64,000 bases of DNA from Orbicella franksi (taxonomy: Eukaryota), in the NCBI GenBank assembly GCA_964199315.1, contig OZ116708.1, positions 20,274,001-20,338,000 of the forward strand, written 5' to 3'. The notes beneath the pieces were generated by a model, which saw nothing but the letters and a program-made list of their open reading frames with translations, was not told the origin of the DNA and did not search any database. Positions 12,914-32,566 of this stretch are shown here, one piece after another (within the stretch, counting starts at the first letter, position 1; every line of letters starts with the position of its first letter). Position numbers and translations under genes: made by a program.

Positions 12914-12930
12914 CCTGAAAAAAGAGAAAG
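12914..12930 (-). promoter_or_regulatory. Probable 3' splice acceptor of a 5'-UTR intron upstream of the family 2 receptor
   Basis: Minus strand reads tttctcttttttcag|GAAAAAC about 110 nt before the ATG. A pyrimidine tract plus CAG is kept at the equivalent site in copies B (about 28258) and C (about 48008). Confidence 0.5.
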
Positions 12931-15535
12931 TTTATAGTTAAGTGTAGAAAGTAGCTCTCCTAGACAACTAACATTGAGCAGCCCAGGCATTTGCATCTCA
13001 CTTCTTATGTCGTAGATCATGGAGTTACATATGCCAATATGCGAGTAATAAAGAAGAAAAAAAGGCAACAGTTTTACTATGAGCAACAAACTATTCTTCA
13101 ATCAGAACAGTGCCTTGGTGTTTCTATAATTCTGTTGTGGTTTCTGCCGTGGGCTCCTGGCCGTGGGCTAAATCGCGTTTTTTTGTGAGAATTACAACTG
13201 CCTTTGCGCGTCGTTTAAACAAAGATCAATGAAATTTGGAGAAGAAATTTGGCGAAAAAAAACTCGTATGAGTTCGTTGTGAAGACAAAACTCCACCCTG
13301 ATAAAATATGTTAAGAATCCCGGGCTAAAAAAAGCAAGTAAAGAGGAAGGATCGTTCCATGATAGCAACAAGAAGGAACTCACCGCTAGCGACAAAGGCC
13401 CAATGTTCGACCAACCTGTGGCCTTCAGAAGGTTGTAATTATAGTACTCCAGTAAACGCTCGCCCAACTGAGTTTCTAACAGTTTCCGCGTTTTGTTTCA
13501 GATCGGCGTTTGATCGATTTTAGTTGCTAGTTGCGCACTCGTTTCTTCTACGGTTTTTTTCTCTTTCGCCGAACCGGAGTGCTTTGTTACTACTCAGTTT
13601 TCCAGTGGCAGAAGCCTTTCTGTTGTGTCTCAAATTCCCATCATCGCAAATCAGTAAGAATGTAAAATAGTATTTTCCAGCAAATTGCAATGGCTTATTT
13701 CTATTAGGACTATCTTGTTCCAAGCTTGTATTTCATGACGATATGACAGTACGATACGAAGGTATGACAGCTTTGACAGTTTTCTTGGTAAGGTGTAATC
13801 AGCTTGCGATTCTTTAAGGGATAAAAACTCGGGCTTTATTTTTGACTTAATTCCTTTCCTTTAAGCGAATTAATAGGGTGTATAGATTTGGGTAAATTCT
13901 CACGAAAATTGGCTAAAATGTTCCTTGATTATCAATGTGCCGAAGTGTTTTCTTTTTTGACATTTCAAATACTTTCTTTCTTAGGCCCTCTCATGTCACG
14001 AAGATCGGCCAACTGATATTATATTCGTGTAATTCAACATTTATTTCCTCATTAGCCAAAACGAATATCGAACAAACCTCACGCACTTTTTGCAGTCGTC
14101 ATTTGCTAATTATTGGCATGATTCAGCTTGTTTTATCGTATGCGAGAACACGAATCCAGGTAACTGAGTTCAGCAACCACTGTCAGTCTTGCGCCCGCTT
14201 ATCAATAAATAAAGTCTTCAAAATAGTTATTCTTTTGATTCTAAATGTGATTGGCTTTACGTTGATACAGTTCTTTTTATATAGTTTTGGTAAAAGCGAA
14301 CAGGAAGTTCTCCTGAGGGTCTAAGGTAACCTTAAGATTAAGATGCAAAACATTATCTTCCCAAACTTCGTGTTTGATGACATTATTTTACTTCTCCTAG
14401 ACGTTTTTGCAGCATTATGTTATACCAGCGGATGAAATCTTGAGTGAGTCGACATACATTATTGATGTGGTTACCATTTTTTCCTTGATTCAGTTAACAG
14501 AACTCTCTAACTAAACTTACAGGCTGCTGTGGAATAATTTTTAGAATATGAATACAGCACACCAAACAGAAATGAAATATGTATATGTAAATGTTTCCCA
14601 CAAATTCAGGCTGTAGCACGCAATGACACTTCGTAATTTACATTTCCATTTTGTTTGTTCAACTGCTTACCTAAGCGATGGGTATCTGATCTTCTGGAGG
14701 CCTCTTTCAGCAAAATGCAGTCTTCTTAACTTTGATGAAAAAGAAAAAAAAAAAAAAAAAAAATTCACAACTGCCGCTTATTATTTTTATATTATATATT
14801 ATTATTATTATAATTGTTATCGTAAGGTGATGTTCCATTTCCGTGAGCAAAAATGAATTGAACAAATATGTTGACCAATGTCTCCATTTTGATTACTGAA
14901 AAAGATGTCTTCTCCGAGCAGAGTGCAAATAGACTTTCACTAACAGGAAATCAAACTTCCGGCCCTTGGTGGTCCTGATTACTTTAGGTTGAGACTTTTT
15001 CGTTGACATTTCCGTGGATCTATCTTGTGTGGCTTTAGACCAATGTCATCAAATGTCAGCTTGATGATTCCATTTCCGTAAAGAAGCATCAACGCATCCT
15101 TTGTAACGAACCTTGAGCTAATAGATATGTCTCCTGCGTTATCATTTTCATGCAATTATTCAGTCCAATCAAACCTATTTGTTTCGGGCAAAGATACTTG
15201 CAAGACATAGTTTCTTTGCAAAGTCGAGAAGGGAGGAAAATTGCTCTACTGGATGACATAAAGAAAGTCATCTCTATCACCGCCAAACAAACATGACCGC
15301 CACTGGTAGTCCAGCTGTTTTAATTAAATTTCTTAGAATTGTTTTCCTACGTGATTCAATAACATTCATTTCAAGCATAAATCGAATTCAAATTCAGATC
15401 CAGTTTTATCTCTCAATTCAACTGCTTTTTTAATCATAATGAGACTGGTACACTGACAATAACCCTATTTCACAGCAATGAAGCACCTGCTGGTGACGGA
15501 AACGAGGTCCAATATAACATGCATTGGTACTTTAA

Positions 15536-17221
15536 GGTGGCTCGATACAGTTTTTTTCTGAGCCATGCTAAGCATTTTCAATTGGCGTTTTACTAACCTT
15601 CCCTTACTCTGATCGATGTGGAAATTACACCAGTTTTTGGAAAAAGATTGAAGTTTGGTTGAAAGTGGTTTTTAAGGTAGTTGATATTTTCATGGAAACG
15701 ACAAACCAAAAATATGAATATCGGTAAAACATGAATTTTGTACGAACCAAATCTGTTATCAAAAATCTGATGCCAATTTCTGAAATTATGATGTATGGCA
15801 AAGGAATATGCAAAAATAATAAAATTCTGTATGTTTGATTTCGAACAAATCGTAAAAACATTTCAAACCGTGCTTTTTGTTTAATTAAATTAAACGGACT
15901 GAAAGAAGAACGCGATTTTAATGAAATTGCCCCAAAAGACACAAAAATGTGTCTTGAAGCTATGTTTTGTTTTGAAGCCATGAAAGGTTTGTTGGTTTGT
16001 GTTTTCTTGATCTCAAGAACGAGACTTTTTCTCAACGTCACTTCCATAATAAATGTAGAACAATTTTCGATTTTCAGTGCTTTTTGTAAAATCTTAGAAA
16101 CGGCTCGATAGATTATTTTAAAACGTTAGATCTATGTGTGTAACATTCTCCCGTGATCAGTACATTTCGCTACAATACCTGAATGCAAATTTGCGGGATG
16201 TTTTTTGAAATACGGATCAAGGGGACTTTTGGCCCTTCTTTCCATAACAGCGAAAGGACTGTTCAGAAAGAATTCCAAAGCTCTACCTTGAGTGACAAAG
16301 AACAGGAAGGTATTGGGGAAAATAGTAATTTTTTTTTTCAGGAGAAAAAGGTCTGAAAATTGCGCACAAGTAATGTCGTCAAAAAGTCAATCAAGGATAA
16401 ATCGAATTATTATTTAAAATATGCATCAATGAAATGTATAGATCACGGAGGAATGTTACACACATAGATCTTAATATTTTTTTAGCATAATTTGTTTTAG
16501 ATCGGGATTTTGTAACGCAACTTTTTCGTGGGTTCGAGTGCCTACTTCATCGACAAATTTAAAAGTGTTCCAGTGTATCGATGCTAATGAAACTTTGGAA
16601 TAAAATTGTTAACATTATCAGGCATACACGATTAACGTTTTGAAATATTCTATCGAGCCGTCCTTAAGAGTTTAGAAAAAGTGCTTAAAATCGAAAATTG
16701 TTCTAAATTTATTATGGAAGTGACGGTGAGAAAAAGTCTCGTTCTCGAGATCAAGAAAACACAAACCAACAAAACTTTCGTCGCTTCCAAACAAAACTTC
16801 AAAATACATTTTGGTGTCTTTTGGAGAATTTTCATTAAAACAGTGTCCTTGCTTCAGTCTATTTAATTTCATCAAACAAAAAGCATGGTTTAAAATGTTT
16901 TTTGCGATTTATTCGAAATCAAACCTATAGAACTTTTTTATTCTTGCATATTCCCCCTGCCATACATCGTAATTTCAGAAATTAGCATCAGATTTTCTAT
17001 AACAGATCTGGTTCGTACACAATTCATGCTTTACCGATTTTCATATTTTTGGTTTATCGTTTCCATGGAAATATCGATTACCTTAAAAAACATATTCAAC
17101 CAAACTTCAATCTTTTTCCAAAAACTGGTGTAATTTCCACATCGATCAGAGTAAGGGAAGGTTAGTAAAACGCCAATTGAAAATGCTAGGTATGGTACAT
17201 TAAAAACTGTATAGAACCACC
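15536..17221. mobile_element. Kolobok-type foldback non-autonomous element, about 590-bp TIRs, TTAA TSD
   Basis: TTAA|GGTGGCTC...GAACCACC|TTAA. 15536-16128 is an imperfect reverse complement of about 16633-17221. Empty site at about 50685 in unit C. Confidence 0.88.
16129..16470. mobile_element. 342-bp MITE nested in the foldback element
   Basis: TIR GATCTATGTGTGTAACATTC(TC)CGTGATC / GATCACGGAGGAATGTTACACACATAGATC, flanked by TTA on the left and TTAA on the right. Confidence 0.7.
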
Positions 17222-17443
17222 TTAAAACCAACCAGAACGTAGTTAGAAAACTGCAGTTTCTTACAGTTGTTTACTTATTGTGCTCTGCCAGACCCCATAG
17301 TTAAGAAAACCGTACATTGAATACAGTTATTCAACTCATTACAGATTTAAATTTCTTCTTTTTAACGGCTAAGCACACCTTCTAAAAGTCTGGATATGGT
17401 TGGCGGGATCTCAATTATCGTTTAAATTTTAGGTGATAAAATA

Positions 17444-17600
17444 GGGCGCTATCCATTCGACCAAAAATTCCGGTGGGAATTTTTGGAAATATTCTGGGGC
17501 GAGTAGAACAGAATTTTTCAGAGTCACTGGAAAACGAGCCGCGCAGGTTTGTTCGCTTTTCAGTGAAATTTTTCAATGACTTCGAGGCTTAATCGCAAAT
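17444..17600 (+). mobile_element. 5' fragment of a Harbinger-like MITE (also at about 32789 and 50907)
   Basis: GGGCGCT(A/T)TCCATTCGACCAAAAATTCCGG start resembles common anthozoan MITE termini. Right end not seen. Confidence 0.35.
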
Positions 17601-18644
17601 ATAGAAGTAAAAAGAACACGGATAAGTTGGCATGTGAGTTTTTATAGATCACTAACGCAGGGACTTCACTTACACAAACCACAATGGCAGCGAAAACGTC
17701 GCAAAACACTTATGACTAATTATGGCGTCACGATAATTAAATACAACGCACTTAGTTTTCGAGAATAACGAGTTTTTCCAGTTAGCTTGGTGAAAAAAGA
17801 GAATAGTTGCCATTGGGAAGCTTCTCAAAAAAATCGACTTCTGTGGATTAAGCAGGTAAGACGATCGTACTGAAAGTGACAAATGTTCAAAACTGCATTT
17901 TTTTTACCTTAACTTTCCAGCTGAAGAAAAGGAAACTTGTTCTTAGAGCAAAAAGCTGTTGACTTCATTCACAGTTGTTATCATCGTCTCAAATGAGTGG
18001 CTTTAGTTTGGAGAAAAACAGATTTCGGTCAGTCGTTCTGACCTGCTGTGGCGATCAACGCATCCACTGCGTTTACGATTCTTAACTGCCTTGAACACGA
18101 GTTCTTGAGAGGATTTTTGGTGCAAGGGCAACAGCGGTCATTTTGAAAATTCTCCATCCTTTCAAATATCGTGGACTTAGAGTGATGTCTTCGGAATAAA
18201 TGAAAAAGTCATTCAGCAACTGCCCACCATGTTTACTTGCCGAGATGGCAAAGATGGCGAGCTTAGTAGCCAGGCCTCGAAAATGTCATGTAAACCGCCT
18301 GGCGCGGTGAATATAAGGTCATATAAGGAATCGCTCAACCAATCAGATTGCTGGAAACTCTTTGTTCAGCTCTGAAATTATACTAAAATTTAATATAATC
18401 GGTCTAGCGGGATAGTGGAACGGTTCAACCTCGATTCTCACTTTTTGAGATCTGCTACACCGACCGAAGAATCAAACCGCCTGGATTCATCTTATCGCCG
18501 GACTGTGACGTTTTTAAATTGAGTTTCGCAGCGATAGATATTTGTCCTAGCCTTATCATGTGCTGACGTCTAACGACTTTACTACAAATATATGGCAAGG
18601 AAAACACATTTCTGTTCATTTAATCGATAAATCAACAGTCCTCT

Positions 18645-19201
18645 AAATCTGGTTCTCACATGACCTCACTAGAATTCAAACTACAAAACTATTGATCCTC
18701 CTGAGATTTTACTGTCTAAGAGCAGCTGAAAAATAATATTCGTACAAGTTTTTTGAATGGGTTCTTGGTTTTGTAATAGACTACGCTTGAATTTCTAAAG
18801 CTTCTTCGCGACGCGGCATTTACATGACGGGCAAGAGAGCTGTCATGTTGGTTAAAAAAGTCACTAATTTCGGGGAATTTGGTTATCTGAACAGTTCATG
18901 TATTAGAAAGAGTAGTATTTTTAAAATTTTCTTGAGTTCCTCGAGAGATAAATTCACGCTTTTGCAACAAAACTCGGTGACGGATGTTTCTGTTGGTTCC
19001 GGCCGCCATGTTGGTGTACATCAGGATGGGCAACAGCATGGTGTCTCCATGAAAATCTCTATAAATTTGGGTACAAAATTTCACCGCATATCTTGCATAA
19101 GAAAAATTGCTGTGACCCGAATCTTGGCGAGAGTCTTTGCATCTTTACCTTCTTTCTTTTCAAGATTCTGGACTTTATCTATTGAGCTGTTTTGAGTTTT
19201 G

Positions 19202-19238
<37 letters not shown>

Positions 19239-19244
19239 GCAATA
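18645..19244. mobile_element. About 600-bp non-autonomous TIR element
   Basis: Left ctggttctcacatgacctcact versus right gtgacactgaaaaccagcaata (inverted match), with an internal ccgccatgttgg motif. Resembles a high-copy coral MITE. Left tip eroded. Confidence 0.6.
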
Positions 19245-19357
19245 GAGTAATTAGATACCCAAACGATGTGGCGGCGGTGTTCTGTGACGTAATTTGTATT
19301 AGCTTACTTTTTAAGTTAAGAGTTGAGGATAATTTACTATTCCATGACAATATTATA

Positions 19358-20510
19358 GGCTATCTGACTTAGAAACTCTCATCTGTCGGTTGTTAGAGAT
19401 TTTGGCGGGAATTTCGCGTATTTTCCGTCATTGTGCGCTTCATGATACCTCTTTCTACGCCATGCGGTCTTGCAAAGACAATTTCAAAGTGCCCATTGCA
19501 TTCACTTTAAAGAAGAAAGAATCGGTCGCTTTGAAGGTCTTCCACAATTTGAGTGGAATAATCTCTACGAACAATATGTGATAGAGCAAGGGTCACTTGG
19601 GGCCGCTTTTATCACAAAAACCAGGAACAAGGACAGAGATTCGAGCCCGAAGGTGGAAAACAGTGGTTGTCAAGAAATCACCTGCTTTTAAAGATTCCCG
19701 CTTAAATAAGATTCCCTATTTTAAAGATTCCCACTTTTAAAGATTCCCCGTTTTAAAGATTCCCGGTTTTAAAGATTCTCGGTTTTAAAGATCCTCGGTT
19801 TTAAAGATTCCCGGTTTTAAAGATTCCTGGTTTTAAAGATTCCCCATTTTGAAGATTCCCCCTTGTAAAGATTTCCCGTTTTAAAGATTCCCGCTTTTAA
19901 AGATTCCACGTTTTAAAGACTCCCGGTTTTAAAGATTCCCCATTTTTAAGATTCCCGCTTTTAAAGATTCCCCATTTTAACAATTCCCGCTTTTAAAGAT
20001 TTCTCATTTTAAAGATTCCCGCTTTTAAAGATTCCACGTTCTAAAGATTCCCGGTTTTAAAGATTCCTGGTTTTAAAGATTCCCCATTTTGAAGATTCCT
20101 CCTTGTAAAGATTTCCCGTTTTAAAGATTCCCGCCTTTAAAGAGTCCCACTTTTAAAGATTCCCCATTTTAAAGATTACTACTTTCAAAGATTCCCCGTT
20201 TTAAAGATGTCCGCTTTTAAAGATTCACCGTTTTAAAGATTTCCGCTTTTAAAAATTCCCCATTTTAAAGAATCCCCATTTTAAAGATTCCCCATTTTAA
20301 AGATTCCCCATTTTAAAGATTCCCGCTTTTAAAGATATCCCGTCTTAAAGACTCCCGCTTTTAATGATTCCCGATTTTAAAGATTCCCGATTTTAAAGAT
20401 TCCCGATTTTAAAGATTCCCGATTTTAAAGATTCCTCATTTTAAAGATATCCCGCTCCCCGTTCCCCATTCCTATTCACCGATTTCCCGTTCCCTCTTTT
20501 AAAGATAGCC
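19358..20510. mobile_element. TIR element (GGCTATCT...AGATAGCC) carrying a kinase-like ORF relic and a 16-bp satellite
   Basis: 8-bp terminal inverted match and subterminal ccccgttccccattcc repeats. Internal relic reads LPQFEWNNLYEQYVIEQGSLGAAFITK. No TSD visible. Confidence 0.5.
19686..20454 (+). repeat. Tandem satellite, unit about 16 bp (TTTTAAAGATTCCCNN), roughly 45-50 units
   Basis: Directly visible tandem array. Confidence 0.97.
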
Positions 20511-20825
20511 GAGAGCTAGCTGCTATTGACTCGGTGATTGACCGCTTTCTCCGGTCACCACCGCACAATAAGACCTTTTTAATAATCGCCGACCCTGTTT
20601 TTACTAAAGCACATAATATAAAGTACTAGAGAATTTGTAAAAGACCTGAGGAAGACAGGCAAAATTGCCAGCGTAGTCTATAAGAAACCAATTTCCAGTG
20701 AGCAGATAAGAAACTGTGCGACATGGCCGAGCTCGGACCGGCCGAGGGCAAAAATCCGGTCTCTTGTTTGGCTCTTGCGAAAAACCCCTTAAGGAGTTGA
20801 GTAGTTTGAGTTATACAAGTCAGCT

Positions 20826-22413
20826 GTACTACCTTACCTTACTTATTGTCACCTAGTGTGGCACTTTTGCAGAGCTAGCGATGCACGAAAACTTGAACGA
20901 CTACAGGAAAGGGGCTTGAGGGCCGTTTACAAGGACAAGCATGCTAGCTATACTCATCTACTGGAGAGAGCCAAGTTGCCAACTCTAGCGAACAGGCGTT
21001 TACAAGACATCTGTATTCTCATAGGTCAAGGTCAAGGTCAACTTTATTTAGGCAGGGTGGCCCAATCAGCACTTGGCTGGTATCAAAAGGGGCCCTGCGT
21101 AAATTAAGACTACATTAAATTTCTATACATAGAGATTAACGTTTACAATTATAAAAAATTAAAAATAAAAACTACTCTCTAAAATAAAGTCTAAGAAGAT
21201 TTTTAAAAACGGGGAGCGATGTTGCTTCTTTTATTGTAGTGGGTAAATTATTAAAATGAAGCGCACCAGAGTATCTGAAAGTCCTTTTCCCTAGCGTTAA
21301 CTTGGGTTTCGGCAAGTGCATGTCGTTCCTTTTCCTCGTGTTGTAAGAATGAACGTTGCAATTTCTAATAAAATAATCCGACAAATATGGAGGAGCTAAA
21401 TTATTTAAACATTTAAAAACTAAAATGCATTTGTGGGCTTTTCTTTGGGTTTCCAAATCCACCCACCCTAACATTTTAAAAGATCCTTCGGTTGTTGCCC
21501 TCCTTTGTATAATGCGTGCTGCTCTGTTTTGCAGACGTTGCAAGCTGTTACTGCAACCGATTGACAGCCCATCCCATACCGTGTTAGTGTAATCAAAAAT
21601 CGGCTGAACTAAACAATTATACACGCATTTAGCAGCTTTTAGAGTAAGGTAGGGTCGTATGCGTGACAGCAGGCCGAGACGTTTTCTTACTCTCTTACAA
21701 ATCAATTCTACATGTTCGTTCCATGAAAGATTCTCATCTAGTGTTACCCCTAAATAACAGAAGCTTGATACTCTGTCAATGTTTTTCCCGTGAAGCTCTA
21801 TTTTATAGTCTGGACAGTGTTCTAGTTTTTGCCTAGTTCCAAACAGCATCCATTTAGTTTTACTCTGATTGAGTATCAGCCTGTTGCTTACTAACCATTT
21901 CTCAACATTGGTAAGATCGTAAAGATCGTAAACAAAAGATAGACTATGTCCTAATAGCATCTGTAACATTTTTAACGAGCATACTTCCGCATACAACCTG
22001 AGACAATCAGATTTTTCTACTCCTAGATACAACACTGTTACTTATGGGAAGCACTCTGCCTTATGTAGGACCCAAATTCAGGGGGAAACTGTCTATGACT
22101 GACACATCAGCCAAGACACTGCCGGCTTTTACAAACTATATTCGCAAAAGGGATATAACTCGCTTAATGGACACCGGCTGTAAGGACTGCATCCTATGCT
22201 GCACATAATGCCCTTCAAGTCATTCATTTTTTTGATGTATTAATATTAGTATTAGAATAGTTTTTTAGCAGTGTCCCTAATTAGTATGGTGTATTATTTC
22301 CAGGGTATAAGGTTTTTGACACTTTAATAAAGTTCTCACTGACTCACTGACTCACTGACTCACTGACTCACTGACTCACTGACTCACTGACTCACTGACT
22401 CACTGACTCACCG
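20826..22413 (+). mobile_element. 5'-truncated LINE (CR1/L2-group RT C-terminus) with (ACTCACTG)n tail, containing a nested LINE
   Basis: Reads WHFC..SD.RKLERLQERGLRAVY...NRRLQDICIL. AATAAA precedes the microsatellite tail. TSD AAGTCAGCT (20817-20825) / AAGTCAACT (22414-22422). Confidence 0.85.
21023..21938 (-). mobile_element. 5'-truncated LINE (L2/CR1-group RT C-terminal domain), nested antisense, unit B only
   Basis: ORF reads W...NRL.LN.SKTK.MLFG...CYLGVTLD..LSW..H...FDY...W...LQRLQNRAARII...GKRTFRYSGA..FN.LP. AATAAA plus a (TTGACC)n tail at the left edge. Absent from the homologous LINE at 35949-36599. Confidence 0.9.
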
Positions 22414-23142
22414 AAGTCAACTCGGTTCGTTACCAGCCACGAAAAACCATCAGGGTGGCCTCAGAGGTTCTGAATTTGAATCCAAGTATACAAGCGTACA
22501 GAATTTAGCATTTTCCCATTTGCGTTCGTTGGATATGACATTTTTATAGCCAACTCGGTTCTACGGGCTTCCTGGGTTATTTACCATCTGATATCCAACG
22601 TGTACTATAGGAGTGATTGTCAATTATCTTTGATAAAGGGGAAAATAAAGTCCAAGCGGTCTGCAACTGAGCGGAACAAATGAGTGTTTTTATGTCCCCC
22701 ACCCCCCTCCCCCCAAATAATATCTATCATATTAGATTAACAAAGTTCAAAAACTTTCACGCGTTTACAATTTATGTAATTTTAACACATTTACAGAATA
22801 CATTCAGGTTTGCGCTTACAATGAATATTCTTTCAAAATTTGACTTGCATGCATCGATTTCTGTTCTATTTTCTCTCTCTGTTTTTTTTTTTTTTTTCAT
22901 CTCTCTTAATCCTACGACATGTTCCATACAACAGGTACCATGATAAATGTATTGCTTTATTTTTTTCGCCATGGATCGGACATGATCTTATGGACTGAAA
23001 CCATCGATTCCAAAAATTTTAGGAGAACAGGCTACATAACAAACGTCTTTACAGAAATATTCATATATTTGTAGCGGCTCAGTGTTCACACTGTAATATC
23101 ATGTTCATCGTCAAATGTCTCATTCCCTTATCGCACATCTTC

Positions 23143-24180
23143 TCAGCTCACCCTAATATTTTGTTCTTGTTCCTCATTAGCTATGACTCCAATCTGTCTC
23201 GGTCCAAAGATTTTCCTTTCAAGCTCCTCAGCTTGTGCAACGGTTTTTCTCGAGAGCAACTCAATGAGGGCTACGCGAAAATATCTTATTCTAACGGAGT
23301 AAATCAACGGATTAAATAACGAATTCAGTACTGGTATCAAAGGAAGAAGATAAATAGCAGTTTGTCCTCCATTGGCAGGGTTCTTGTTGGTAGTGGAAGC
23401 CAAAACGGCAAAGAAGATATTTATTGGAATAAAGCAAAGAAAAGAAGCCAGTAGAACAACAGTTGTCGTGTAGAAAGCTTTCTTGCTTTTCAGTAACTCC
23501 TTCTTCGCTTCTAAGGAAATTTGGTTAGCAGCAATTTGTTTCTCGTTGCGGCGGACCTCCTTGTATACAACACAATTAAAATAAATCATTGCGGGAAAAT
23601 AGAGAAAAACTGGCCCGACTATGAACACTACAAAGTTACTTGAAAAATCTGTGTTAGTTTTGAAGACGTCTTGCATGGGAAGCAATAGGGCTATAACCCA
23701 CGCCAGACCAGAGGCTATGATGATACGAACTTCAGTTACCTGGTTCTCATACGTGAAGGGGTGTCTAACCGCGACATAACGCTCTGCACTCAACAAAATT
23801 AAATGACAAACTGATGCCGTCAGAAATTTGCCAGTGAGAGTCACTGATAGTTTGTCTAGGTTGCAGAATATGTTTCCTTGACCACTGAGAAGATAACTTC
23901 CGTGTACGATATGAAAAGGCTGAACAAGTAGTCCCACCACGAGGTCAGTTGTGGCTAAACAGGCGAGTGCTATGTTAGATTTAGTGCGAAGCTGTCGTTT
24001 GGTTTTCACTGCAACCATCACCAGGATGTTGAGCAAAATTATGAAAGGACAGGTGAAAGAGTTCACGACCATTCTGGCGATGAATACAGCGCGAACATCG
24101 GAAGAAATATTTTCGGCATTTATAGGAAGAAATGCGAGACCACAACTAATTATTGTGCGGTTGATAGTGGTGAAATTCAT
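23143..24180 (-). CDS. Class A GPCR family 1, copy B, 345 aa, intact, apparently an A/C chimera
   Basis: Intact 7TM ORF with LNILV, LATTD, SAERY, CFIP, NSLFNPLIY. Confidence 0.92.
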   Translation of the reverse strand: MNFTTINRTIISCGLAFLPINAENISSDVRAVFIARMVVNSFTCPFIILLNILVMVAVKTKRQLRTKSNIALACLATTDLVVGLLVQPFHIVHGSYLLSGQGNIFCNLDKLSVTLTGKFLTASVCHLILLSAERYVAVRHPFTYENQVTEVRIIIASGLAWVIALLLPMQDVFKTNTDFSSNFVVFIVGPVFLYFPAMIYFNCVVYKEVRRNEKQIAANQISLEAKKELLKSKKAFYTTTVVLLASFLCFIPINIFFAVLASTTNKNPANGGQTAIYLLPLIPVLNSLFNPLIYSVRIRYFRVALIELLSRKTVAQAEELERKIFGPRQIGVIANEEQEQNIRVS

Positions 24181-25209
24181 CTTCCTTCGACTGACTGAGT
24201 GTGTGATAATTTCCTTGCTTCGTGTTTTCAGATCGCTTACCTTTCTTATTTTCCCTCTTAAATGAGTTCAGTTCTTAATTTCGTTTATAGTCTGATTACA
24301 GCAGGTGATGTTCATTCATTCATTCATTCAGGATAATACTAAACTTACGTACTTTAATACAAAATCACTTTATTACAATTCAACTAAAATTGTCATTACA
24401 TTAGCATACTATTCTTATCTAAAATGCCAGCTACGTCCTAATTTTAAATGCACATAGCCGGGTTTTAAAATTTTGAGAGCTTAAGATTTTAAGGTATTCA
24501 GTAAAGATAACGTTGAATTCCAAAGAAAATGTGAACTATGTTTTCAAAAACACCAAGTATCATTATAAGAGGACTTGAGACCGGTAAGTGCACTACTGTC
24601 GGGAATCCAGTAATTTACCGTAATTGACTATTCTATTATTAGCTTCCATTTTTTTTTTTCGTTGCAAAAATGGCAAACAATAATGTTCTCAATTGTCAAT
24701 TTTACTAATGTTCATGAGACACGTTTCAATTTCTGTTTCTTCCCAACCAACTTAGCGGTTTCGAAAAAAAAAAACTTATTTTTTTATATATGGAAATATA
24801 TATATATTTTTTTGAACTTTGTTTTGGCTTTAGCCATTTTCTACCTTTTGTTTTGGTGCTGAGTACCGCAGTGTCGGTCTCTAGCGATCTGTTGCAATTG
24901 TGCCGAATCCTTGTTTTATTTATTTTGATGGCGCGCCTGTTTCCCTTTGAGAGTTACGAAACATCCATCTGTGTTAATGTCTCTCTTGGGGCCGTAGGAT
25001 GAAATAGCAACGTCAAAAACAAAAACAAAAACTAAACGAATCGTAATTACCAATGCCAAAATTAATATACACCCTTTCGTAATCGAGCAAGCTTTACGTG
25101 GCACATTAGAACTCACCGAGTAAGAACCCTTTGTGTTTCGTTGGAAAGCAGAGTTTCTTTGACGAAGCTGCTGTATTACTACATTATTAGGTTTGGCTTT
25201 TATTAATGA

Positions 25210-25502
25210 GGTGTAAGCCTTACCATAATTGTTTGTTAATTAACGTAAAGAGCTTGTGTAACGAAATCCACACAGACATCGGTGCTAGCAAGGTAACCTA
25301 GTAACAGTTTTGATTGTGGATGAAGAGAGATGACACTTTTGGAAGAACAATGATGATCAGAACATTTCCCAGAAGCGCGGTGATGGAAAGAAGAATATTA
25401 ATTGCTGAAAAAAATGATCTTTGGCTTTGGCTCAGTAAGAGCGGTCAAGTAATAAAACCCTTCAGTTGTAGTTTGGTTTTTAATTTCAGTTAAGTTCTGC
25501 AT
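25210..25502 (-). pseudogene. Class A GPCR family 2, 5' fragment, unit B
   Basis: Near-identical to 9880-10169 with the same truncation. Confidence 0.8.
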
Positions 25503-25639
25503 TTTTTTCTCGACAATGATTGTTACTACTGTCTTCTTTCTAGACAAACAAGATCAATTGTGAACTAAGATTGTTCCCGCCTGGTCCAGTAATGATTGAA
25601 AACCTCCAGAGTCATAAACGTAAGAAATCAATTTTAAGC

Positions 25640-25823
25640 NNNNNNNNNNNNNNNNNNNNNNNNNNNNNNNNNNNNNNNNNNNNNNNNNNNNNNNNNNNNN
25701 NNNNNNNNNNNNNNNNNNNNNNNNNNNNNNNNNNNNNNNNNNNNNNNNNNNNNNNNNNNNNNNNNNNNNNNNNNNNNNNNNNNNNNNNNNNNNNNNNNNN
25801 NNNNNNNNNNNNNNNNNNNNNNN
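25640..25823. other. Run of 184 N
   Basis: Seen directly. Same flanks as 10307-10478. Confidence 0.99.
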
Positions 25824-27221
25824 AAACATCTAAATGCTTGTTATGATGGTGAGAATTTCCTATAGTCTGCACTTACTTTGTCCTGGGACTTTTAAGATTT
25901 TGGGTTTTTTACGCTCTACCCGCTGATTTGTCTCCAAAAGTATTGACTCAACAGCAATCAAACTTGCATGGCATCTAAAGCATCCAAATGTGACTATTTT
26001 AGTGATAATTACGTGTCAATCTTGAAGTCACATTTTATACTTTGTATTTTTACGACGTCATATTTCAAAATGACCATCTTGGATTTCAAACATTATTTAA
26101 ATAAGCTACAACAGCTCCGATTGTTTTCAAAACTGTAAAGAATTTGAAATGTAATCTTTGTAACATCCAGAATGAATCAAGAACAGATATCTAACCTCAA
26201 GAAAACCGCGAAAGTGTAGTAAAAAAAGCTCTTTGAGAACTTGGTTGCCATAGAAATGGCACGTCATGCGACCAAACGTTTGACATACATGTACAAAAAA
26301 TGTTCCCTGATAAATTTAGGAAAATTGACAAAATTCAACCATAATATCTCTTGAATGCTCTTTAAGTTGAAAAAGTTTGAAATAAGCGCGCGTGCATTTT
26401 TTCCTTTGTCTTCCACCAAAGGTCAAAGAGCGTTTACCCTTGCACGTACATGCAAACTCATAACCCCATACGGACAGTACAAAGAAGGGGAGGGGAGGTG
26501 GTTGGACCCCAGCATTTTCTCATTAAGGTACGCTATTTTGAAACTTTCTACCCTTAATATAGAGAAACTGTCTCTGTCGCCTACAAGATGATGTTAGTAT
26601 TATGGCATACCTATGAAAGAACGCTGCTGGGGGCCCAGTGACGTAATCCAACATGGCAGAAACTTTCAGATTTTTCCCTTTTTTCCATCGTAATTTTTGT
26701 ATTTTGGCGTGAAACTTATAGCTCTGACAGCTTCCAATATTACATTATAATAACCATTAATTTTCTCGTAGCTTACGTACACACCTCACTTGTCCTTGGA
26801 AATCCCCTTAATGTGCGAGCCGATTTTCACCACATTCTCAGCAAATATGTCTCAAAGATAAACGAACGCCTACTTAAATGGACAAGTGCCTAGGGAAAAT
26901 CCTGTTGACAAAGTTTTAAAGAACCCGAGGGGTGGAGTGGGGCCGGCAACCACTTACACAACTTACAATACTAACATTGCTTACAATTCATTAATATCTC
27001 GCTTTACTTACAAATAATATCTTGTAATGCTTAAGGTTAACTAACTTTACGTACTTTGCTATATCATCTTGGCTAAATATTAAAACATAGTGATAACTGA
27101 TAACTGTATTTGGAGCATTTTTGGCATCAGTGAAAAAAATGCTCGTTTGGTAAGTAATGTTTTCTTGACTGATAAATGACTCTTGATGGCAATCAGCCAT
27201 ACCGCTAGGGTTTCGAGACCA

Positions 27222-28145
27222 CTAACCCGGGAAACAGTTCACCTCCTTGATCGTGTCCTTCACTGCTCGCCTCACGTCTTTCAGTTTCCAACAGTACAGA
27301 AATGGATTCAACGTGGAGTTCAACAAAAGAAGAGTAATCGTTACAGCATGAGCTTGGTGAAAAGTTGGTGAGTGTAATCCAAGCACGCCACGTAAACCTG
27401 TAACAACAGCAAATGGCAGATAACAAGCAAGTAAAGTCATTTGTACCCACAAAGCGCTGGACACGGTCTTTCTGTATCGTGCTATATTCAATGGAATTCG
27501 TGCTTCGCTTTGTTGTCCTTGGGATGTATTATTATGTAATCGAGCTTGGTGACGGTGAAGGGTAAGATAAACCTTCATATAACAAAATATGAAGGTTACT
27601 AGACATAACAGCATTATTATGGAGGTAATCGTTTCAGCTATGCGACGCTTGTAAAGCATTGTTATTGAAAAGCCAGTGCTAAAAAGCCAAAAAAACCCCA
27701 CAAGGACCCATACTCGCCTCAAGGTTACCACTTGCCTGTATCTTAGCCTCAACATCAGGGCGAGAAGTCTGTCTACACTTATTGCTGTTATTGTTAACAA
27801 AGATACCCCACAGAAAATGTAACCTATCGTATTTGAAAGTATGGTAGAATAGTAGCAAAGTTTGGAATGTTCTGGAGCGAAAATAAAGGTCACAAAAAGA
27901 GGATGTGAAATTAAGCCCACACAGAAATCGGTGCTTGCAAGGCAACCAAACAGAAGTTTTGACGGCGGGTGAAGGGAAGAGACTTTTCGAAGAGCAACAA
28001 AAATCAGAACATTTCCCATTAAAGCAATAATGGAAAGGAGAATATTCAATGCCGAAATAATTGTTCGATGTGGTTCCTTAAGGCTCTCCAAGCAACAGAA
28101 CTCTTGAATTGTCGTGCAGTTTCCAATTTCAGTAAAATTCGGCAT
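27222..28145 (-). CDS. Class A GPCR family 2, copy B, 307 aa
   Basis: Intact ORF with 9 amino-acid differences from copy A. Confidence 0.92.
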   Translation of the reverse strand: MPNFTEIGNCTTIQEFCCLESLKEPHRTIISALNILLSIIALMGNVLIFVALRKVSSLHPPSKLLFGCLASTDFCVGLISHPLFVTFIFAPEHSKLCYYSTILSNTIGYIFCGVSLLTITAISVDRLLALMLRLRYRQVVTLRRVWVLVGFFWLFSTGFSITMLYKRRIAETITSIIMLLCLVTFIFCYMKVYLTLHRHQARLHNNTSQGQQSEARIPLNIARYRKTVSSALWVQMTLLACYLPFAVVTGLRGVLGLHSPTFHQAHAVTITLLLLNSTLNPFLYCWKLKDVRRAVKDTIKEVNCFPG

Positions 28146-30887
28146 TATGTTTTGTCTCGATAATTTTCCCTTTTCTTTCTGTTATCAAAATCTTCTTATC
28201 TTCTGGGTCGTTTTTGAGGAATCCTACTTCAGATGTTATAGTTTCATCTGTCTTTCCTGAAAAAAGAGAAATTTATAGTTAAGTGTAGAAAGTAGCTCTC
28301 CTAGACAACTAACATTGAGCAGCCCTTAGTGAACGACCCAGGCATTTGCATCTCACTTCCTTATGTCATAGATCATGGAGTTACATATGCCAATATGCGA
28401 GTAAGAAGAGAAAAAGGTAACAGTTTTACTATGAGCAACAAACTATTCTTCAATCAGAATAGTGTCTTGGCTTTTCTATAATTCTTTTGCGGTTTCTGCC
28501 GTGGGCTCCTGGCCGTGGGCTAAATCGCATTTTTATGTGAGAATTACAACTGCCTTTGCGCGTCGTTTAAAGAAAGATCGATGAAATTTGGAGAAGAAAT
28601 TTGGCGAAAAAAGACTCGCATGAGTTCGTTGTGAAGACAAAACTCCACCCTGATAAAATATGTTGAGAATCCCGGGCTGAAAAAAACAAGTAAAGAGGAA
28701 GGATCGTTCCATTATAGCAACAAGAAGGAACTCACCGCTAGCGACAAGGGGCCAATGTTCGACCAACCTGTGGCCTTCAAAAGGTTGTAATTATAGTACT
28801 CCAGTAAACGCTCACCCAACTGAGTTTCTAACAGTTTCCGCGTTTTGTTTCAGATCGGCGTTTGATCGATTTTAGTTGCTAGTTGCGCAGTGGTTTCTTC
28901 TACGGTTTTTTTCTCTTTCGCCTAACCGGAGTGCTTTGTTACTACTCAGTTTTCCAGTGGCAGAAGCCTTTGTGTTGTGTCTCAAATTCCCATCATCGCA
29001 AATCAATGAGAATGTAAAATAGTATTTTCCAGCAAATTGCAATGGCTTATTTCTGTTAGGGCTATCTTGTTCCAAGCTTGTATTTCATGACGACATGACA
29101 GTACGATACGACGGTATGACAACTTTGACAGTTTTTTTTGGTAAGGTGTAATCAGCTGCGATTCTTTAAGAGATAAAAACTCGGGCTTTATTTTTGACTT
29201 GATTCCTTTCCTTTAAGCGAATTAATAGGGTGTATAGATTTGGGTAAATTCTCACGAAAATTGGCTAAAATGTTCCTTGATTATCAATGTGCCGAAGTGT
29301 TTTCTTTTTTGACATTTCAAATACTTCCTTTCTTAGGCCCCCTCATGTCACGAAGATCGGCCAACTAATATTATATTCGTGTAATTCTACATTTATTTCC
29401 TCATTAGCCAAAACGAATATCGAACAAACCTCACGCACTTTTTGTAGTCGTCATTTGCTAATTATTGGCATGATTCAGCTTGTTTTATCGTATGTGAGAA
29501 CACGAATCCAGGTAACTGAGTTCAGCAACCACTGTCAGTCTTGCGCCCGCTTATCAATAAATAAAGTCTTCAAAATAGTTATTTCTTTTGATTCTAAATG
29601 TGATTGGCTTTACGTTGATAGAGTCCTTTTCATATAGTTTTGGTAAAAGCGAACAGGAAGTTCTTCTGAGGGTCTAAGGTAACCTTAAGATTAAGATGCA
29701 AAACATTATCTTCCCAAACTTCGTGTTTGATGACATTATTTTACTTCTCCTAGACGTTTTTGCAGCATTATATTATACCAGTAGATGAAATCTTGAGTGA
29801 GTCGACATACATTATTGATGTGGTTACCATTTTTTCCTTGATTCAGTTAACAGAACTCTCTAACTGAACTTGCAGGCTGCTGTGGAATAATTTTTAGAAT
29901 ATGAATACAGCACACCAAACAGAATTGAAATATGTATATGTAAATGTTTCCCACAAATTCAGGCTGTAGCACGCAATGACACTCCATAATTTACATGTCC
30001 ATTTTGTTTATTCAACTGCTTACCTAAGCGATGGGTATCTGATCTTCTGGAGGCCTCTTTCAGCAAAATGCAGTCTTCTTAACTTTGATGAAAAAAAAAA
30101 AAAAAAAAAAAAAAAAATTCACAACTGCCGCTTATTATTTTTATATTATATATTATTATAATTGTTATCGTAAGGTGATGTTCCATTTCCGTGAGCAAAA
30201 ATGAATTGAACAAATATGTTGACCAATGTCTCCATTTTGATTACTGAAAAAGATGTCTTCTCCGAGCAGAGTGCAAATAAACTTTCACTAACAGGAAATC
30301 AAACTTCCGGCCCTTGGTGGTCCTGATTACTTTAGGTTGAGACTTTTTCGTTGACATTTCCGTGGATCTATCTTGTGTGGCTTTAGACCAATGTCATCAA
30401 ATGTCAGCTTGATGATTCCATTTCCGTAAAGAAGCATCAACGCATCCTTTGTAACGAACCTTGAGCTAATAGATATGTCTCCTGCGTTATCATTTTCATG
30501 CAATTATTCAGTCCAATCAAACCTATTTGTTTCGGGCAAAGATACTTGCAAGACATAGTTTCTTTGCAAAGTCGAGAAGGGAGGAGAATTGCTCTACTGG
30601 ATGACATAAAGAAAGTCATCTCTATCAGCGCCAAACAAACATGACCGCCACTGGTAGTCCAGCTGTTTTAATTAAATTTCTTAGAATTGTTTTCCTAAGT
30701 GATTCAATAGCATTCATTTCAAGCATAAATCGAATTCAAATTCAGATCCAGTTTTATCTCTCAATTCAACTGCTTTTTTTTTTTATCATAATGAGACTGG
30801 TACACTGACAATAACCCTATTTCACAGCAATGAAGCACCTGCTGGTGACGGAAACGAGGTCCAATATAACTTGCATTGGTACTTTAA

Positions 30888-32566
30888 GGTGGCTCGATAC
30901 AGTTTTTTTCTGAGCCATGCTTAGCATTTTCAATTGGCGTTTTACTAACCTTCCCTTACTCTGATCGATGTGGACATTACACCAGTTTTTGGAAAAAGAT
31001 TGAAGTTTGGTTGAAAGTGGTTTTTAAGGTAGTTGATATTTTCATGGAAACGACAAACCAAAAATATGAATATCGGTAAAACATGAATTTTGTACGAACC
31101 AAATCTGTTATCAAGAATCTGATGCCAATTTCTGAAATTATGATGTATGGCAAAGGAATATGCAAAAATAATAAAATTCTGTATGTTTGATTTCGAACAA
31201 ATCGTAAAAACATTTCAAACCGTGCTTTTTGTTTAATTAAATTAAACGGACTGAAAGAAGAACGCGATTTTAATGAAATTGCCCCAAAAGACACAAAAAT
31301 GTGTCTTGAAGCTATGTTTTGTTTTGAAGCCATGAAAGGTTTGTTGGTTTGTGTTTTCTTGATCTCAAGAACGAGACTTTTTCTCAACGTCACTTCCATA
31401 ATAAATTTAGAACAATTTTCGATTTTCAGCGCTTTTTGTAAAATATTAGAAACGGCTCGATAGATTATTTTAAAACGTTAGATCTATGTGTAATATTCTC
31501 CCGTGATCAGTACATTTCGCTACCATACCTGAATGCAAATTTGCGGGATGTTTCTTGAAATACGGATCAAGGGGACTTTTGGCCCTTCTTTCCATGCCAG
31601 CGAAAGGACTGTTCAGAAAGAATTCCAAAGCTCTACCTTGAGTGACAAAGAACAGGAAGGTATTGGGGAAAATAGTATTTTTTTTTCAGGGGAAAAACGT
31701 CTGAAAATTGCGCACAAGTAATGTCGTCAATAAGTCAATCAAGGATAAATCGAATTATTATTTAAAATATGCATCAATGAAATGTATAGATCACGGAGGA
31801 ATGTTACACACATAGATCTGAATATTTTAGCATAATTTGTTTTAGATCGGGATTTTGTAACGCAACTTTTTCCTGGGTTCGAGCGCCTACTTCATCGACA
31901 AATTTAGAAGTGTTCCAGTGGATCAATGCTAATGAAACTTTGGAATAAAATTGTTAACATTATCAGGCATACACGATTAACGTTTTGAAATATTCTATCG
32001 AGCCGTCCTTAAGAGTTTAGAAGAAGCGCTTAAAATCGAAAATTGTTCTAAATTTATTATGGAGGTGACGGTGAGAAAAAGTCTCGTTCTCGAGATCAAG
32101 AAAACACAAACCAAAAAAACTTTCGTCGCTTCCAAACAAGACTTCAAAATACATTTTGGTGTCTTTTGAAGAATTTTCATTAAAACAGTGTCCTTGCTTC
32201 AGTCTATTTAATTTCATGAAACAAAAAGCATGGTTTAAAATGTTTTTTGCGATTTATTCGAAATCAAACCTATAGAACTTTTTTATTCTTGCATATTCCC
32301 CCTGCCATACATCGTAATTTCAGAAATTGGCATCAGATTTTCTATAACAGATCTGGTTCGTACACAATTCATGCTTTACCGATTTTCATATTTTTGGTTT
32401 ATCGTTTCCATGGAAATATCGATTACCTTAAAAAACATATTCAACCAAACTTCAATCTTTTTCCAAAAACTGGTGTAATTTCCACATCGATCAGAGTAAG
32501 GGAAGGTTAGTAAAACGCCAATTGAAAATGCTAGGTATGGTACAGAAAAAACTGTATAAAACCACC
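30888..32566. mobile_element. Kolobok-type foldback element, unit B copy
   Basis: TTAA|GGTGGCTC...AAACCACC|TTAA with about 590-bp inverted arms. Confidence 0.88.
31481..31818. mobile_element. Nested MITE, unit B copy
   Basis: Homologous to 16129-16470. Right TTAA has mutated to TGAA. Confidence 0.65.

What the first reader, a model, noticed from the sequence alone, without database searches (positions are those of the whole stretch)
23433..23500. Chimeric GPCR apparently created by unequal crossing-over inside the gene
Seen: left of about 23432 (TM6, TM7, C-tail and downstream flank, including LINE 1), B matches C and not A (CFIP, AVLAS, NKNP, GGQT, IYLLP). Right of about 23500, most diagnostic sites and the upstream flank match A and not C (KKEL, AANQ, EVR, KLSV, NSFT, ISCG), with some A-private changes. 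The window between is identical in all three. Inference: recombination between old paralogues C and A at the ICL3/TM6 boundary duplicated the whole intervening block. It built an intact hybrid receptor (A-type TM1-5, C-type TM6-7 and tail) while the donor A copy died. This is a concrete mechanism for generating new ligand pockets in an intronless receptor cluster.
Basis: partly seen in the sequence, partly recalled or inferred. Interest (0 to 1): 0.75.

Follow-up and report, generated by a model that had tools for sequence, protein, structure and literature searches.

The report
Recombinant coral GPCR gene from unequal crossover
In a coral receptor-gene cluster, the middle of three near-identical genes is a real-looking mosaic of its two neighbours, best explained by a textbook unequal crossover that also duplicated the roughly 14-19 kb between them; this is an ordinary mechanism, and the exact switch point and the claimed functional novelty are much less certain than first stated.

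Summary
The window is a scleractinian coral chromosome segment with three intronless rhodopsin-type GPCR genes on the minus strand: A 4104-5153, B 23143-24180 and C 37327-38361.

**Observation: confirmed.**
- At or left of 23432, B equals C and not A (61 sites against 6).
- 23433-23499 is identical in all three genes.
- The upstream flank of B is A-like.
- The maximum chi-square breakpoint was matched by 0 of 10000 permutations.
- The whole block 4406-23432 is colinear with 23433-37616 at 97.3%. Gene B therefore sits on the junction of a tandem duplication, as an A x C unequal crossover predicts (an anti-Lepore-type product).

- Independent alleles from other coral samples show that KKEL, AANQ and EVR are private to this C allele. 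KLSV/KVSM is polymorphic in both A and C.
- Firm A-type markers start only at 24057 (codon 42). The crossover lies somewhere in 23433-24056.
- In that tract A and C were already homogenised: dS is 0.035, against 0.197 in the 3' third.
- "A-type TM1-5" is therefore not demonstrable.
- A's only defect, one TAG, is absent from two other A alleles.
- Divergence along the duplicate is uneven (6% in the upstream flank, 0.75% downstream), so further exchange or an inter-haplotype origin is needed.

No read spanning the junction could be examined. Two unchecked scan notes report similar GPCR patchworks elsewhere in this genome.

The parts
4104..5153 (-). Gene A: 7tm_1 GPCR, colinear with B with no indel. 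It has a single TAG at codon 144 (plus-strand 4722-4724). Its 3' third (at or below 4405) is the divergent 'a3' type.
   Evidence: The TAG is absent from independent A alleles L032 and L055.
23143..24180 (-). Gene B: intact 345-aa 7tm_1 GPCR, the recombinant copy.
   Evidence: ORF; PF00001, E = 3.9e-32, 112 bits against a 30.5-bit cut-off; mosaic.
37327..38361 (-). Gene C: intact 344-aa 7tm_1 GPCR. This allele carries private changes, including a 3-bp deletion (KKEL to KEL).
   Evidence: Independent C alleles are L031 (99.1%) and L056 (98-99%).
22736..23432 (-). C-type part of B: codons 250-345 (mid-TM6, TM7, helix 8, tail) plus 407 bp of downstream flank.
   Evidence: 61 B=C sites against 6 B=A. 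B-C is 97.2-99.3% and A 89-91%. The tree gives (B,C,C2) 95/92, and B+A is rejected at p = 0.032.
23433..24056 (-). Undifferentiated tract (codons 43-249, mid-TM1 to mid-TM6) that must contain the crossover. A and C had been homogenised here. 23433-23499 is identical in all three copies.
   Evidence: dS is 0.035 here against 0.197 in codons 250-345. The only candidate marker, 23623, is A-type in one C allele.
24057..25173 (-). A-type part of B: codons 1-42 (derived S41 and F42 shared with three A alleles) and about 1 kb of upstream flank.
   Evidence: synapomorphies at 24057 and 24060. A-B is 93.9% and B-C 87.1%.
4406..23432 (.). Copy 1 of the duplicated block: 5' part of A, its upstream flank, the second GPCR gene, a foldback element, a tandem-repeat zone, LINE-bearing spacer, and the 3' part of B.
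23433..37616 (.). Copy 2 of the duplicated block: 5' part of B through to the 3' part of C. It is 97.3% identical to copy 1 in ungapped columns.
   Evidence: 363 mismatches in 13,343 columns; dispersion index 3.0.
25173..25179 (.). Deletion junction in B's upstream flank. A 6128-9843 is missing and a 5-nt filler (TATTA) is present, with no flanking repeat.
   Evidence: A 6128-7142 is homologous to C 39317-40377, so it is a deletion in the B unit.
6128..9843 (.). 3.7-kb segment present upstream of A and absent upstream of B. At least its first 1 kb is also present upstream of C.
   Evidence: It is present in independent contig L055 at 99.67%.
11880..12803 (-). Second-family GPCR gene carried inside the duplicated block (copy 1). 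Its partners are 27222-28145 (copy 2) and 46986-47912 (old unit).
15534..17225 (.). Foldback element present in both recent copies (also 30886-32571) and absent at the homologous site of the old unit (50686/50689). This fixes the order: old duplication, then insertion, then recent duplication.
   Evidence: self-BLAST; scan note s1-243922.

Best explanation
Gene B is a genuine recombinant paralogue made by non-allelic homologous recombination (unequal crossover) between two older tandem paralogues, A and C. A and C are about 10-17% diverged outside the coding 5' part.

**Inferred sequence of events**
1. Interlocus gene conversion had made codons 43-249 of A and C virtually identical.
2. A misaligned crossover inside that roughly 620-bp identity tract joined the C 3' end (mid-TM6 onward, plus everything downstream of C) to the A 5' end (N-terminus and promoter side).
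3. That left A - block - B(hybrid) - block - C on one chromosome, duplicating the whole intervening block. The block includes a second GPCR gene and is now 19.0 kb and 14.2 kb in its two copies.
4. Later changes followed: a 3.7-kb deletion 1 kb upstream of B, a roughly 0.9-kb indel downstream of B, lineage-specific substitutions in A, B and C, a haplotype-private nonsense mutation in A, and continued small-scale exchange between the copies.

**Shown:** the mosaic, the colinear duplication, the in-frame junction without indel, the homogenised tract, and polymorphism shared between A and C.

**Inferred:** that a single crossover (rather than crossover plus conversion) set the C-type end, the order of events, and any functional consequence.
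For: - **Mosaic.** At or left of 23432, 61 B=C sites against 6 B=A. To the right, 91 B=A against 40. Maximum chi2 64.9, reached by 0 of 10000 permutations.
- **Rooted trees with five outgroup paralogues.** Zone 1 gives (B,C,C2) 95/92 and (A,A2) 99/97. Codons 1-249 give (B,(A,A2)) 91/97. B+A is rejected in zone 1, p-AU 0.032.
- **Architecture.** 4406-23432 matches 23433-37616 continuously. A's own downstream flank left of 3705 has no counterpart. The old paralogy is 3705-17652 against 36925-51113, and the spacer between the old units now occurs twice. That is what an A x C crossover predicts. A foldback element is shared by both recent copies and absent from the old unit.
- **Substrate.** A-C dS is 0.035 in codons 1-249 against 0.197 in codons 250-345. 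It is established that such crossovers need long stretches of near-perfect identity. The flanks, at 87-91%, are poor substrates.
- **B is a locus of its own, not an allele.**
  - B's upstream flank is 6% from A, while A alleles from another sample differ by 0.7% and C alleles by 0.7-1.3%.
  - Three A alleles share five derived sites that B lacks, and C alleles share derived sites that B lacks.
  - Only 44-49% of B-region 31-mers can come from A or C, yet 10 runs from 5 studies hold 69-78% of them.
  - There is no N gap at the junction and no extra haplotig in the assembly.
Against: - No single molecule or read spanning C-type to A-type sequence was seen.
- Within codons 43-249 the A origin of B is not significant (AU p = 0.149). 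All three pairs have the same dS.
- The two halves of the supposed single event differ in age. A-B upstream is 6.1% diverged, while B-C downstream is 0.75% (flank) to 2.8% (coding). The duplicated block is over-dispersed (index 3.0, p = 3e-12). Either later conversion or a crossover between already diverged haplotypes must be added.
- B's exact protein is not on record in public assemblies.
Confidence: 0.68

Rival explanations
1. Duplication first, conversion later. The tandem duplication junction lay elsewhere, for example at the edge of the old homology near 22736, or B began as a complete A-like copy. B's 3' third then acquired C-type sequence through a later, separate interlocus gene conversion between B and C (or repeated conversions). 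B would still be a chimera, but not the direct product of one intragenic crossover.
For: - B-C divergence in the 3' flank (0.75%) is no larger than allelic divergence at C (0.76%). It is far below A-B divergence upstream (6.1%).
- Conversion demonstrably acts here: there is a homogenised A/C tract, and 23844/23850 are polymorphic in both A and C alleles.
- Divergence along the duplicate is patchy.
Against: - No left-hand end of a conversion tract is visible. High B-C identity runs on continuously into the duplicated spacer.
- It needs an extra event.
- A crossover in 87-91% identical sequence is mechanistically disfavoured compared with one in the near-identical tract.
Confidence: 0.17
2. Assembly artefact. 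Only A and C exist. The assembler walked from C's 3' half through the shared tract back into A's 5' flank of the other haplotype, laying the two haplotypes of the spacer in tandem and creating a false hybrid gene.
For: - The two spacer copies differ by 2.7% plus two large indels, which could pass for divergent haplotypes.
- B's 3' flank is as close to C as another C allele is.
- No spanning read was examined.
- Short-read contigs from other samples yielded A-type and C-type pieces but no B-type coding contig.
Against: - B's upstream flank is 6% and a 3.7-kb deletion away from A, six to eight times the allelic divergence measured at the same place.
- B-unique 31-mers are present in all ten best-matching runs from five studies.
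- The shared tract is only about 0.6-0.75 kb, far shorter than long reads.
- There is no gap at the junction. The two N runs sit at homologous positions in both copies.
- A alleles and C alleles each group together to the exclusion of B.
Confidence: 0.08
3. B is an old third paralogue. Its resemblance to A upstream and to C downstream comes only from repeated patchy concerted evolution of a three-unit array, with no A x C crossover at all.
For: - There are three divergence levels along the unit (6%, 2.7%, about 1%).
- The interleaved A-only and A+B site patterns in the CDS look like layered exchange.
Against: - A's downstream flank shows no trace of the spacer end that precedes B and C. A regular three-unit array should have it.
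- Conversion tracts of 10-15 kb would be needed to homogenise the spacers.
Confidence: 0.05

Closest known systems
Haemoglobin anti-Lepore type duplication products (delta - hybrid - beta), from my own knowledge
   Same: Unequal crossover between two tandem paralogues in direct orientation. It leaves both parents intact, puts an in-frame hybrid between them, and duplicates the intergenic block.
   Different: Here the genes are intronless GPCRs in a coral. The crossover tract had been homogenised beforehand, so the hybrid differs little from its parents. The product appears widespread in the species rather than a rare variant.
OPN1LW/OPN1MW hybrid cone-opsin genes made by non-allelic homologous recombination and gene conversion (PMC13258009, introduction)
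   Same: Rhodopsin-family GPCR genes in a head-to-tail array. Both crossover and conversion produce hybrids, and which residues are exchanged depends on where the switch falls.
   Different: The opsin exchanges occur mostly in introns of multi-exon genes and have measured spectral consequences. Here the exchange is inside a single coding exon and no function or ligand is known.
Tandemly duplicated rhodopsin-like GPCR families of scleractinian corals (Noel et al. 2023, PMC10236652)
   Same: That paper reports rhodopsin-like GPCR as the most frequent domain among coral-amplified families (34 of 192 orthogroups), amplified mainly by tandem duplication. This genome has at least 119 matches to B, many of them clustered on the same chromosome.
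   Different: That paper states that gene conversion is very rare in corals. This locus shows a conversion-like homogenised tract and a polymorphism shared between paralogues, and it gives a base-level mechanism for one duplication.

Membership tests
Rhodopsin-like (class A) GPCR, Pfam PF00001 7tm_1 | Profile match above the curated gathering score over the seven-helix core | tested here: met
   B scores 112.2 bits (cut-off 30.5) over residues 51-294 of a 260-position profile. C scores 109.5 bits.
Rhodopsin-like (class A) GPCR, Pfam PF00001 7tm_1 | Hallmark motifs: E/DRY at the end of TM3, CWxP-like in TM6, NPxxY in TM7 | tested here: met
   ERY 133-135 and NPLIY 290-294 are invariant in 44 homologues. 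TM6 has C249-F/Y250-I-P252, with the usual Trp replaced.
Rhodopsin-like (class A) GPCR, Pfam PF00001 7tm_1 | Seven-helix fold | tested here: inconclusive
   the AlphaFold2 model has mean pLDDT 49.8. The helices are at the expected places, but the confidence is too low to count.
Hybrid gene from unequal crossover (NAHR duplication product) | Two parental paralogues in tandem, same orientation, with the hybrid between them | tested here: met
   A, B and C are all on the minus strand. A and C head old units that are 83-91% alike.
Hybrid gene from unequal crossover (NAHR duplication product) | Everything between the two crossover-homologous points is present twice and colinear | tested here: met
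   4406-23432 against 23433-37616, 13,343 aligned columns, 97.3% identity.
Hybrid gene from unequal crossover (NAHR duplication product) | Parentage switches once, at a homologous position, in frame, with no indel, inside a high-identity tract | tested here: met
   The second scan of the right-hand part finds no further significant breakpoint (p = 0.25-0.68).
Hybrid gene from unequal crossover (NAHR duplication product) | Both sides of the junction date to the same event (equal divergence from their respective parents) | tested here: not met
   A-B upstream is 6.1% diverged against 0.75% for B-C downstream; over-dispersion p = 3e-12. Later conversion or an inter-haplotype crossover is needed.
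Hybrid gene from unequal crossover (NAHR duplication product) | Single DNA molecules carry the hybrid with both flanks | not testable with these tools
Only k=31 contigs exist for DNA runs.
Interlocus gene conversion (concerted evolution) tract | Sharp drop of synonymous divergence between paralogues, bounded by normally diverged sequence | tested here: met
   A-C dS is 0.035 (codons 1-249) against 0.197 (codons 250-345). The flanks are 87-89% identical.
Interlocus gene conversion (concerted evolution) tract | The same polymorphism segregates in both paralogues | tested here: met
   at 23844/23850, A, A3, B and C2 carry one state and C, C3 and A2 the other. Caveat: A2 comes from a short-read contig whose 3' end is chimeric.

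The most novel reading that the evidence does not exclude
The 620-bp tract (codons 43-249) may be a recurrently used recombination cassette. Ongoing conversion would keep the helix 1-6 core identical among neighbouring coral GPCR genes. Crossovers in it would then repeatedly re-pair promoters and N-termini with TM6-TM7 and tail modules, duplicating or deleting whole units. That would be a built-in shuffling mechanism behind the very large coral GPCR expansions, and it would contradict the published view that gene conversion is very rare in corals.
Probability: 0.1. Interest if true: 0.6.

Novelty: new member of a known kind. Interest (0 to 1): 0.3.

Why it matters
The locus gives a base-level, datable example of how one of the most amplified gene families of reef corals grows: homologous recombination between neighbouring intronless receptor genes. 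It also shows that interlocus gene conversion does operate in at least one coral GPCR cluster, against a published generalisation (PMC10236652).

The mechanism itself is textbook. The hybrid differs from its parents by few, mostly conservative residues, so no new biology follows unless the pattern proves recurrent or the receptor's ligand and expression are determined.

For the scan, the case is a warning. Triplet 'diagnostic' sites can be allele-private, and a breakpoint cannot be placed more finely than the pre-existing identity tract.

Tried and rejected
1. **Reads.** No read or contig layout was obtained. After that, no letters of 21141-21177 were sent to any search tool. Local scripts on the whole window only counted mismatches and k-mers.
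2. **Sequencing runs.** No raw DNA reads or long reads are offered for this species, only k=31 contigs. These cannot bridge the 67-190 bp identical stretch.
3. **Exact-protein look-ups.** B, C and the unit-2 second GPCR are not on record. P0121 could not be fetched.
4. **JGI metagenome scan.** It returned A-type and C-type pieces from another colony but no contig crossing the shared tract. The absence of a C-type 3' contig is compatible with two near-identical copies tangling the graph, but it is not evidence.
5. **Site 23623.** I considered using it to narrow the crossover to 23433-23622. It is derived and shared by A, A2, A3 and B. I dropped it as firm evidence because C allele L056 also has the A state, 9 bases from a contig end.
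6. **Family-wide boundary.** I tested whether a 5'/3' identity contrast at TM6 is general among 26 other paralogues in this genome. Some pairs are mosaic in either direction (for example 92.1/85.5 and 86.0/92.7), but there is no common boundary.
7. **Structure.** The AlphaFold2 model of B was too poor (pLDDT 50) to map the exchanged residues onto a pocket. No fold search was run.
8. **Mutagenic repair.** I rejected repair at the 25173 deletion as the cause of the 6% upstream divergence, because A-private and B-private changes are equally frequent (27 each).

Full report
**What is there**

The window is G000:C11:20274001-20338000 of a 497-Mb genome. The best named relatives of the encoded receptors are from the stony corals Oculina patagonica, Orbicella faveolata and Pocillopora. 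Sequencing runs that hold the region are labelled coral or coral metagenome.

Three intronless genes of one rhodopsin-type GPCR family lie on the minus strand:
- A, 4104-5153
- B, 23143-24180 (345 aa; PF00001, 112 bits)
- C, 37327-38361 (344 aa)

The family is large, with at least 119 matches in the genome. The next paralogue is only 63% identical in protein. A pseudogene at C11:16.43 Mb is about 85% identical in DNA to the 5' three-quarters of the CDS (83% over the rest).

A second GPCR family alternates with the first: 11880-12803, 27222-28145, 46986-47912, and a fragment at 54563-55069. The two N runs (10307-10478, 25640-25823) sit at homologous positions of the two repeat units and were left alone.

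**Checking the observation**

A three-way alignment shows three zones in B.
- **Zone 1**, 22736-23432 (codons 250-345 plus 407 bp downstream). B-C is 97.2-99.3% identical. A is 89-91% from both.
- **Zone 2**, 23433-24180. All three are 97.5-98.5% alike. 23433-23499 is identical in all, and a 3-bp indel in C follows at 23500-23502.
- **Zone 3**, 24181-25173. A-B is 93.9%. C is 87% from both.

Counting sites, B=C against B=A is 61:6 at or left of 23432 and 40:91 to the right. The maximum chi-square is 64.9 and none of 10000 permutations reaches it. No second significant breakpoint is found to the right.

Rooted trees with five outgroup paralogues give (B,C,C2) 95/92 in zone 1 and (B,(A,A2)) 91/97 in zone 2.

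**The larger architecture**

Self-comparison and a pairwise alignment show that 4406-23432 is colinear with 23433-37616. Over 13,343 ungapped columns there are 363 mismatches (2.7%).

The A-to-B offset is exactly 19,027 bp through the whole CDS, so the junction is in frame and has no indel. The two copies now measure 19.0 kb and 14.2 kb. The difference comes from two indels:
- A 3.7-kb segment (6128-9843) is missing upstream of B.
- An indel of about 0.9 kb lies at 21022-21935.

The first is a deletion in the B unit. A 6128-7142 is homologous to C's upstream region. The junction carries a 5-nt filler and has no flanking repeat.

An older paralogy (83-91%) links 3705-17652 with 36925-51113. The spacer between those old units now occurs twice, while A's own downstream flank (left of 3705) is unique.

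A foldback element (15534-17225 and 30886-32571; scan note s1-243922) is in both recent copies but absent from the old unit at 50686/50689. The order is therefore old duplication, then insertion, then recent duplication.

This is exactly the product expected from a misaligned crossover between A and C: A, block, hybrid, block, C. It is the same form as an anti-Lepore globin chromosome (my own knowledge) and as hybrid L/M opsin genes (PMC13258009).

Independent alleles from other coral samples could be fetched:
- L031 is the C locus, 99.1% identical including C's upstream flank.
- L032/L043 is an A allele, 98.8%.
- L055 and L057 are A alleles, 99.6-99.7% over 5.7 and 3.5 kb.
- L056 is a C allele, 98-99%.

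These alleles change the reading of the sites right of 23500.
- The 3-bp indel (KKEL), 23515, 23531 (AANQ), 23730 (EVR) and 23782 are private to this genome's C allele.
- 23844/23850 (KLSV against KVSM) segregate in both A and C alleles.
- These sites therefore say nothing about B's parentage.
- If only sites on which two C alleles agree are used, the chi-square optimum moves to 24003|24057 (chi2 62.0).

Firm A-type markers begin at 24057/24060. S41 and F42 are derived against 20 outgroup proteins and five outgroup genes, and they are shared by A, A2, A3 and B. They continue through 24146, 24171 and the upstream flank.

One synonymous site, 23623, also looks like an A+B shared derived state. 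However, C allele L056 has it too, near a contig end.

The B=C sites inside zone 2 (23737, 24003, 24103, 24111, 24163) are derived states shared by three A alleles. They are A-lineage changes that arose after the event.

The crossover can therefore only be placed in 23433-24056 (codons 43-249, mid-TM1 to mid-TM6). The AU test does not reject B+C for codons 1-249 (p = 0.149).

Helix positions come from motifs (ERY 133-135, C-F/Y-I-P 249-252, NPLIY 290-294) and from a low-confidence model. Site 23432 is the second base of codon 250, inside TM6. The identical 67 bp cover the end of ICL3 and the cytoplasmic half of TM6.

**Why the switch looks sharp at 23432**

A-C synonymous divergence is 0.197 in codons 250-345 but 0.035 in codons 1-249. 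In that 5' part all three pairs have the same dS. Protein constraint cannot explain this.

A and C had therefore been homogenised over the 5' part of the CDS shortly before, or around the time of, the duplication. The trans-paralogue polymorphism shows that exchange continued or continues.

The edge at 23432 is the edge of that conversion tract. The crossover then happened somewhere inside the tract, which is the only good substrate, since the flanks are 87-91% identical.

This local evidence for conversion contrasts with the statement in PMC10236652 that gene conversion is very rare in corals. The same paper reports rhodopsin-like GPCRs as the most frequent domain among tandemly amplified coral families, so the duplication itself is ordinary.

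**What does not fit a single clean event**

- The upstream flank of B is 6.1% from A, with A-private and B-private changes balanced at 27 each.
- The downstream flank of B is only 0.75% from C, no more than the C-C2 allelic difference.
- The block as a whole is over-dispersed (index 3.0, p = 3e-12), with a peak at 24468-25173.

Either later conversion homogenised most of the block and the B/C 3' ends, or the crossover took place between two already diverged haplotypes whose divergence varied along the block. I cannot tell which. This is why a 'duplication first, C-to-B conversion later' history keeps 0.17.

**Is it an assembly artefact?**

The main artefact scenario is a haplotype loop through the shared tract. 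It would require B's upstream flank to be an allele of A's. That flank is 6% and one 3.7-kb deletion away from A, against 0.7-1.3% between true alleles at the same places.

Further points against an artefact:
- A alleles and C alleles each group together to the exclusion of B.
- Only 44-49% of the 31-mers of 22700-25200 occur in A, C or their alleles, yet ten runs from five studies hold 69-78% of the sampled words. That is about what 1% polymorphism leaves of a locus that is present.
- The junction has no gap, and the assembly has no spare haplotig of the locus.

No spanning molecule was seen, however. I worked beside those places afterwards and sent none of their letters to a search tool. I put the artefact at 0.08.

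**Other claims**

*'The donor A copy died.'* A differs from an open frame by one TAG at codon 144. Alleles L032 and L055 have TAT there. The nonsense change is therefore private to this haplotype, or is an error. It is not a fixed loss.

*'New ligand pockets.'* At the time of the event the parents differed in about four residues at the N-terminus and start of TM1: T4A, S12N, S41A, F42L. From TM6 on they differed in about eleven mostly conservative residues (F250Y, V259I, K266R, Q273E, L279I, E307Q, L320V, I324M, E336V, E339V, V344T) plus a 4-residue tail difference.

B has since gained I92V and F305L. F305L is at a position conserved in at least 90% of homologues. No ligand, expression or pocket effect can be inferred. 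B-lineage changes are mostly synonymous, which fits a gene still under constraint, but the counts are small.

**Comparison and verdict**

B is a member of the class A GPCR family (profile and motifs met; fold not confidently modelled). As a mechanism, it meets the architectural criteria of a hybrid produced by non-allelic homologous recombination. It fails the equal-age criterion, and single-molecule proof is missing.

It is a new member of a known kind. Two unchecked first-reader notes report GPCR patchworks on other pieces of this genome (s1-229019, s1-200602). My quick comparison of 26 other paralogues shows some mosaic pairs but no common boundary. A systematic 'cassette shuffling' reading stays possible but unlikely (0.1).

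Interest is 0.3: a tidy, well-documented example whose interpretation needed correction, not a surprise.

Noticed in passing
window 4722-4724 (codon 144 of gene A): The only defect of gene A is a TAT-to-TAG change. Two independent A alleles from other coral samples (L032, L055) have the intact Tyr codon. It is therefore a haplotype-private nonsense polymorphism or a sequence error, not a fixed pseudogene.
   Followed up: yes
L032:1040-1315 (JGI contig Ga0126341_1013895): This A-type contig switches after about codon 300 to a tail that is 97% identical to a different paralogue on another chromosome (G000:C10:17120896-17121171). It is either a chimeric short-read contig joined in the conserved NPxxY/helix-8 region or a further natural recombinant.
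   Followed up: partly
L031:2607-2646 against window 37363-37413: The independent C allele carries an in-frame 51-bp deletion in the cytoplasmic tail (328 aa instead of 344 aa).
   Followed up: no
window 24468-25173 against 5406-6127: The kilobase between gene B and its upstream deletion junction is 5-11% diverged from the A copy. That is two to four times the rest of the duplicated block, and changes are equally frequent on both lineages. The cause is unexplained: an old haplotype block, escape from homogenisation next to the deletion, or low-complexity sequence.
   Followed up: partly
window 19681-20456 and 35012-35579; window 58940-59887: Long tandem-repeat arrays. One has a period of about 32 bp and is present in both copies of the duplicated block. 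Another has a period of about 78 bp and lies near the right end of the window.
   Followed up: no
window 15534-17225 and 30886-32571; empty site 50686/50689: A foldback element with inverted arms of about 600 bp is present in both recent copies and absent from the older paralogous unit. It agrees with scan note s1-243922 and helps order the two duplications.
   Followed up: partly
   Followed up: no
window 11880-12803, 27222-28145, 46986-47912, 54563-55069: A second, unrelated 7tm_1 GPCR family alternates with the A/B/C family. Three copies are intact and one is a fragment. The copy at 27222-28145 was created by the same duplication as B.
   Followed up: partly
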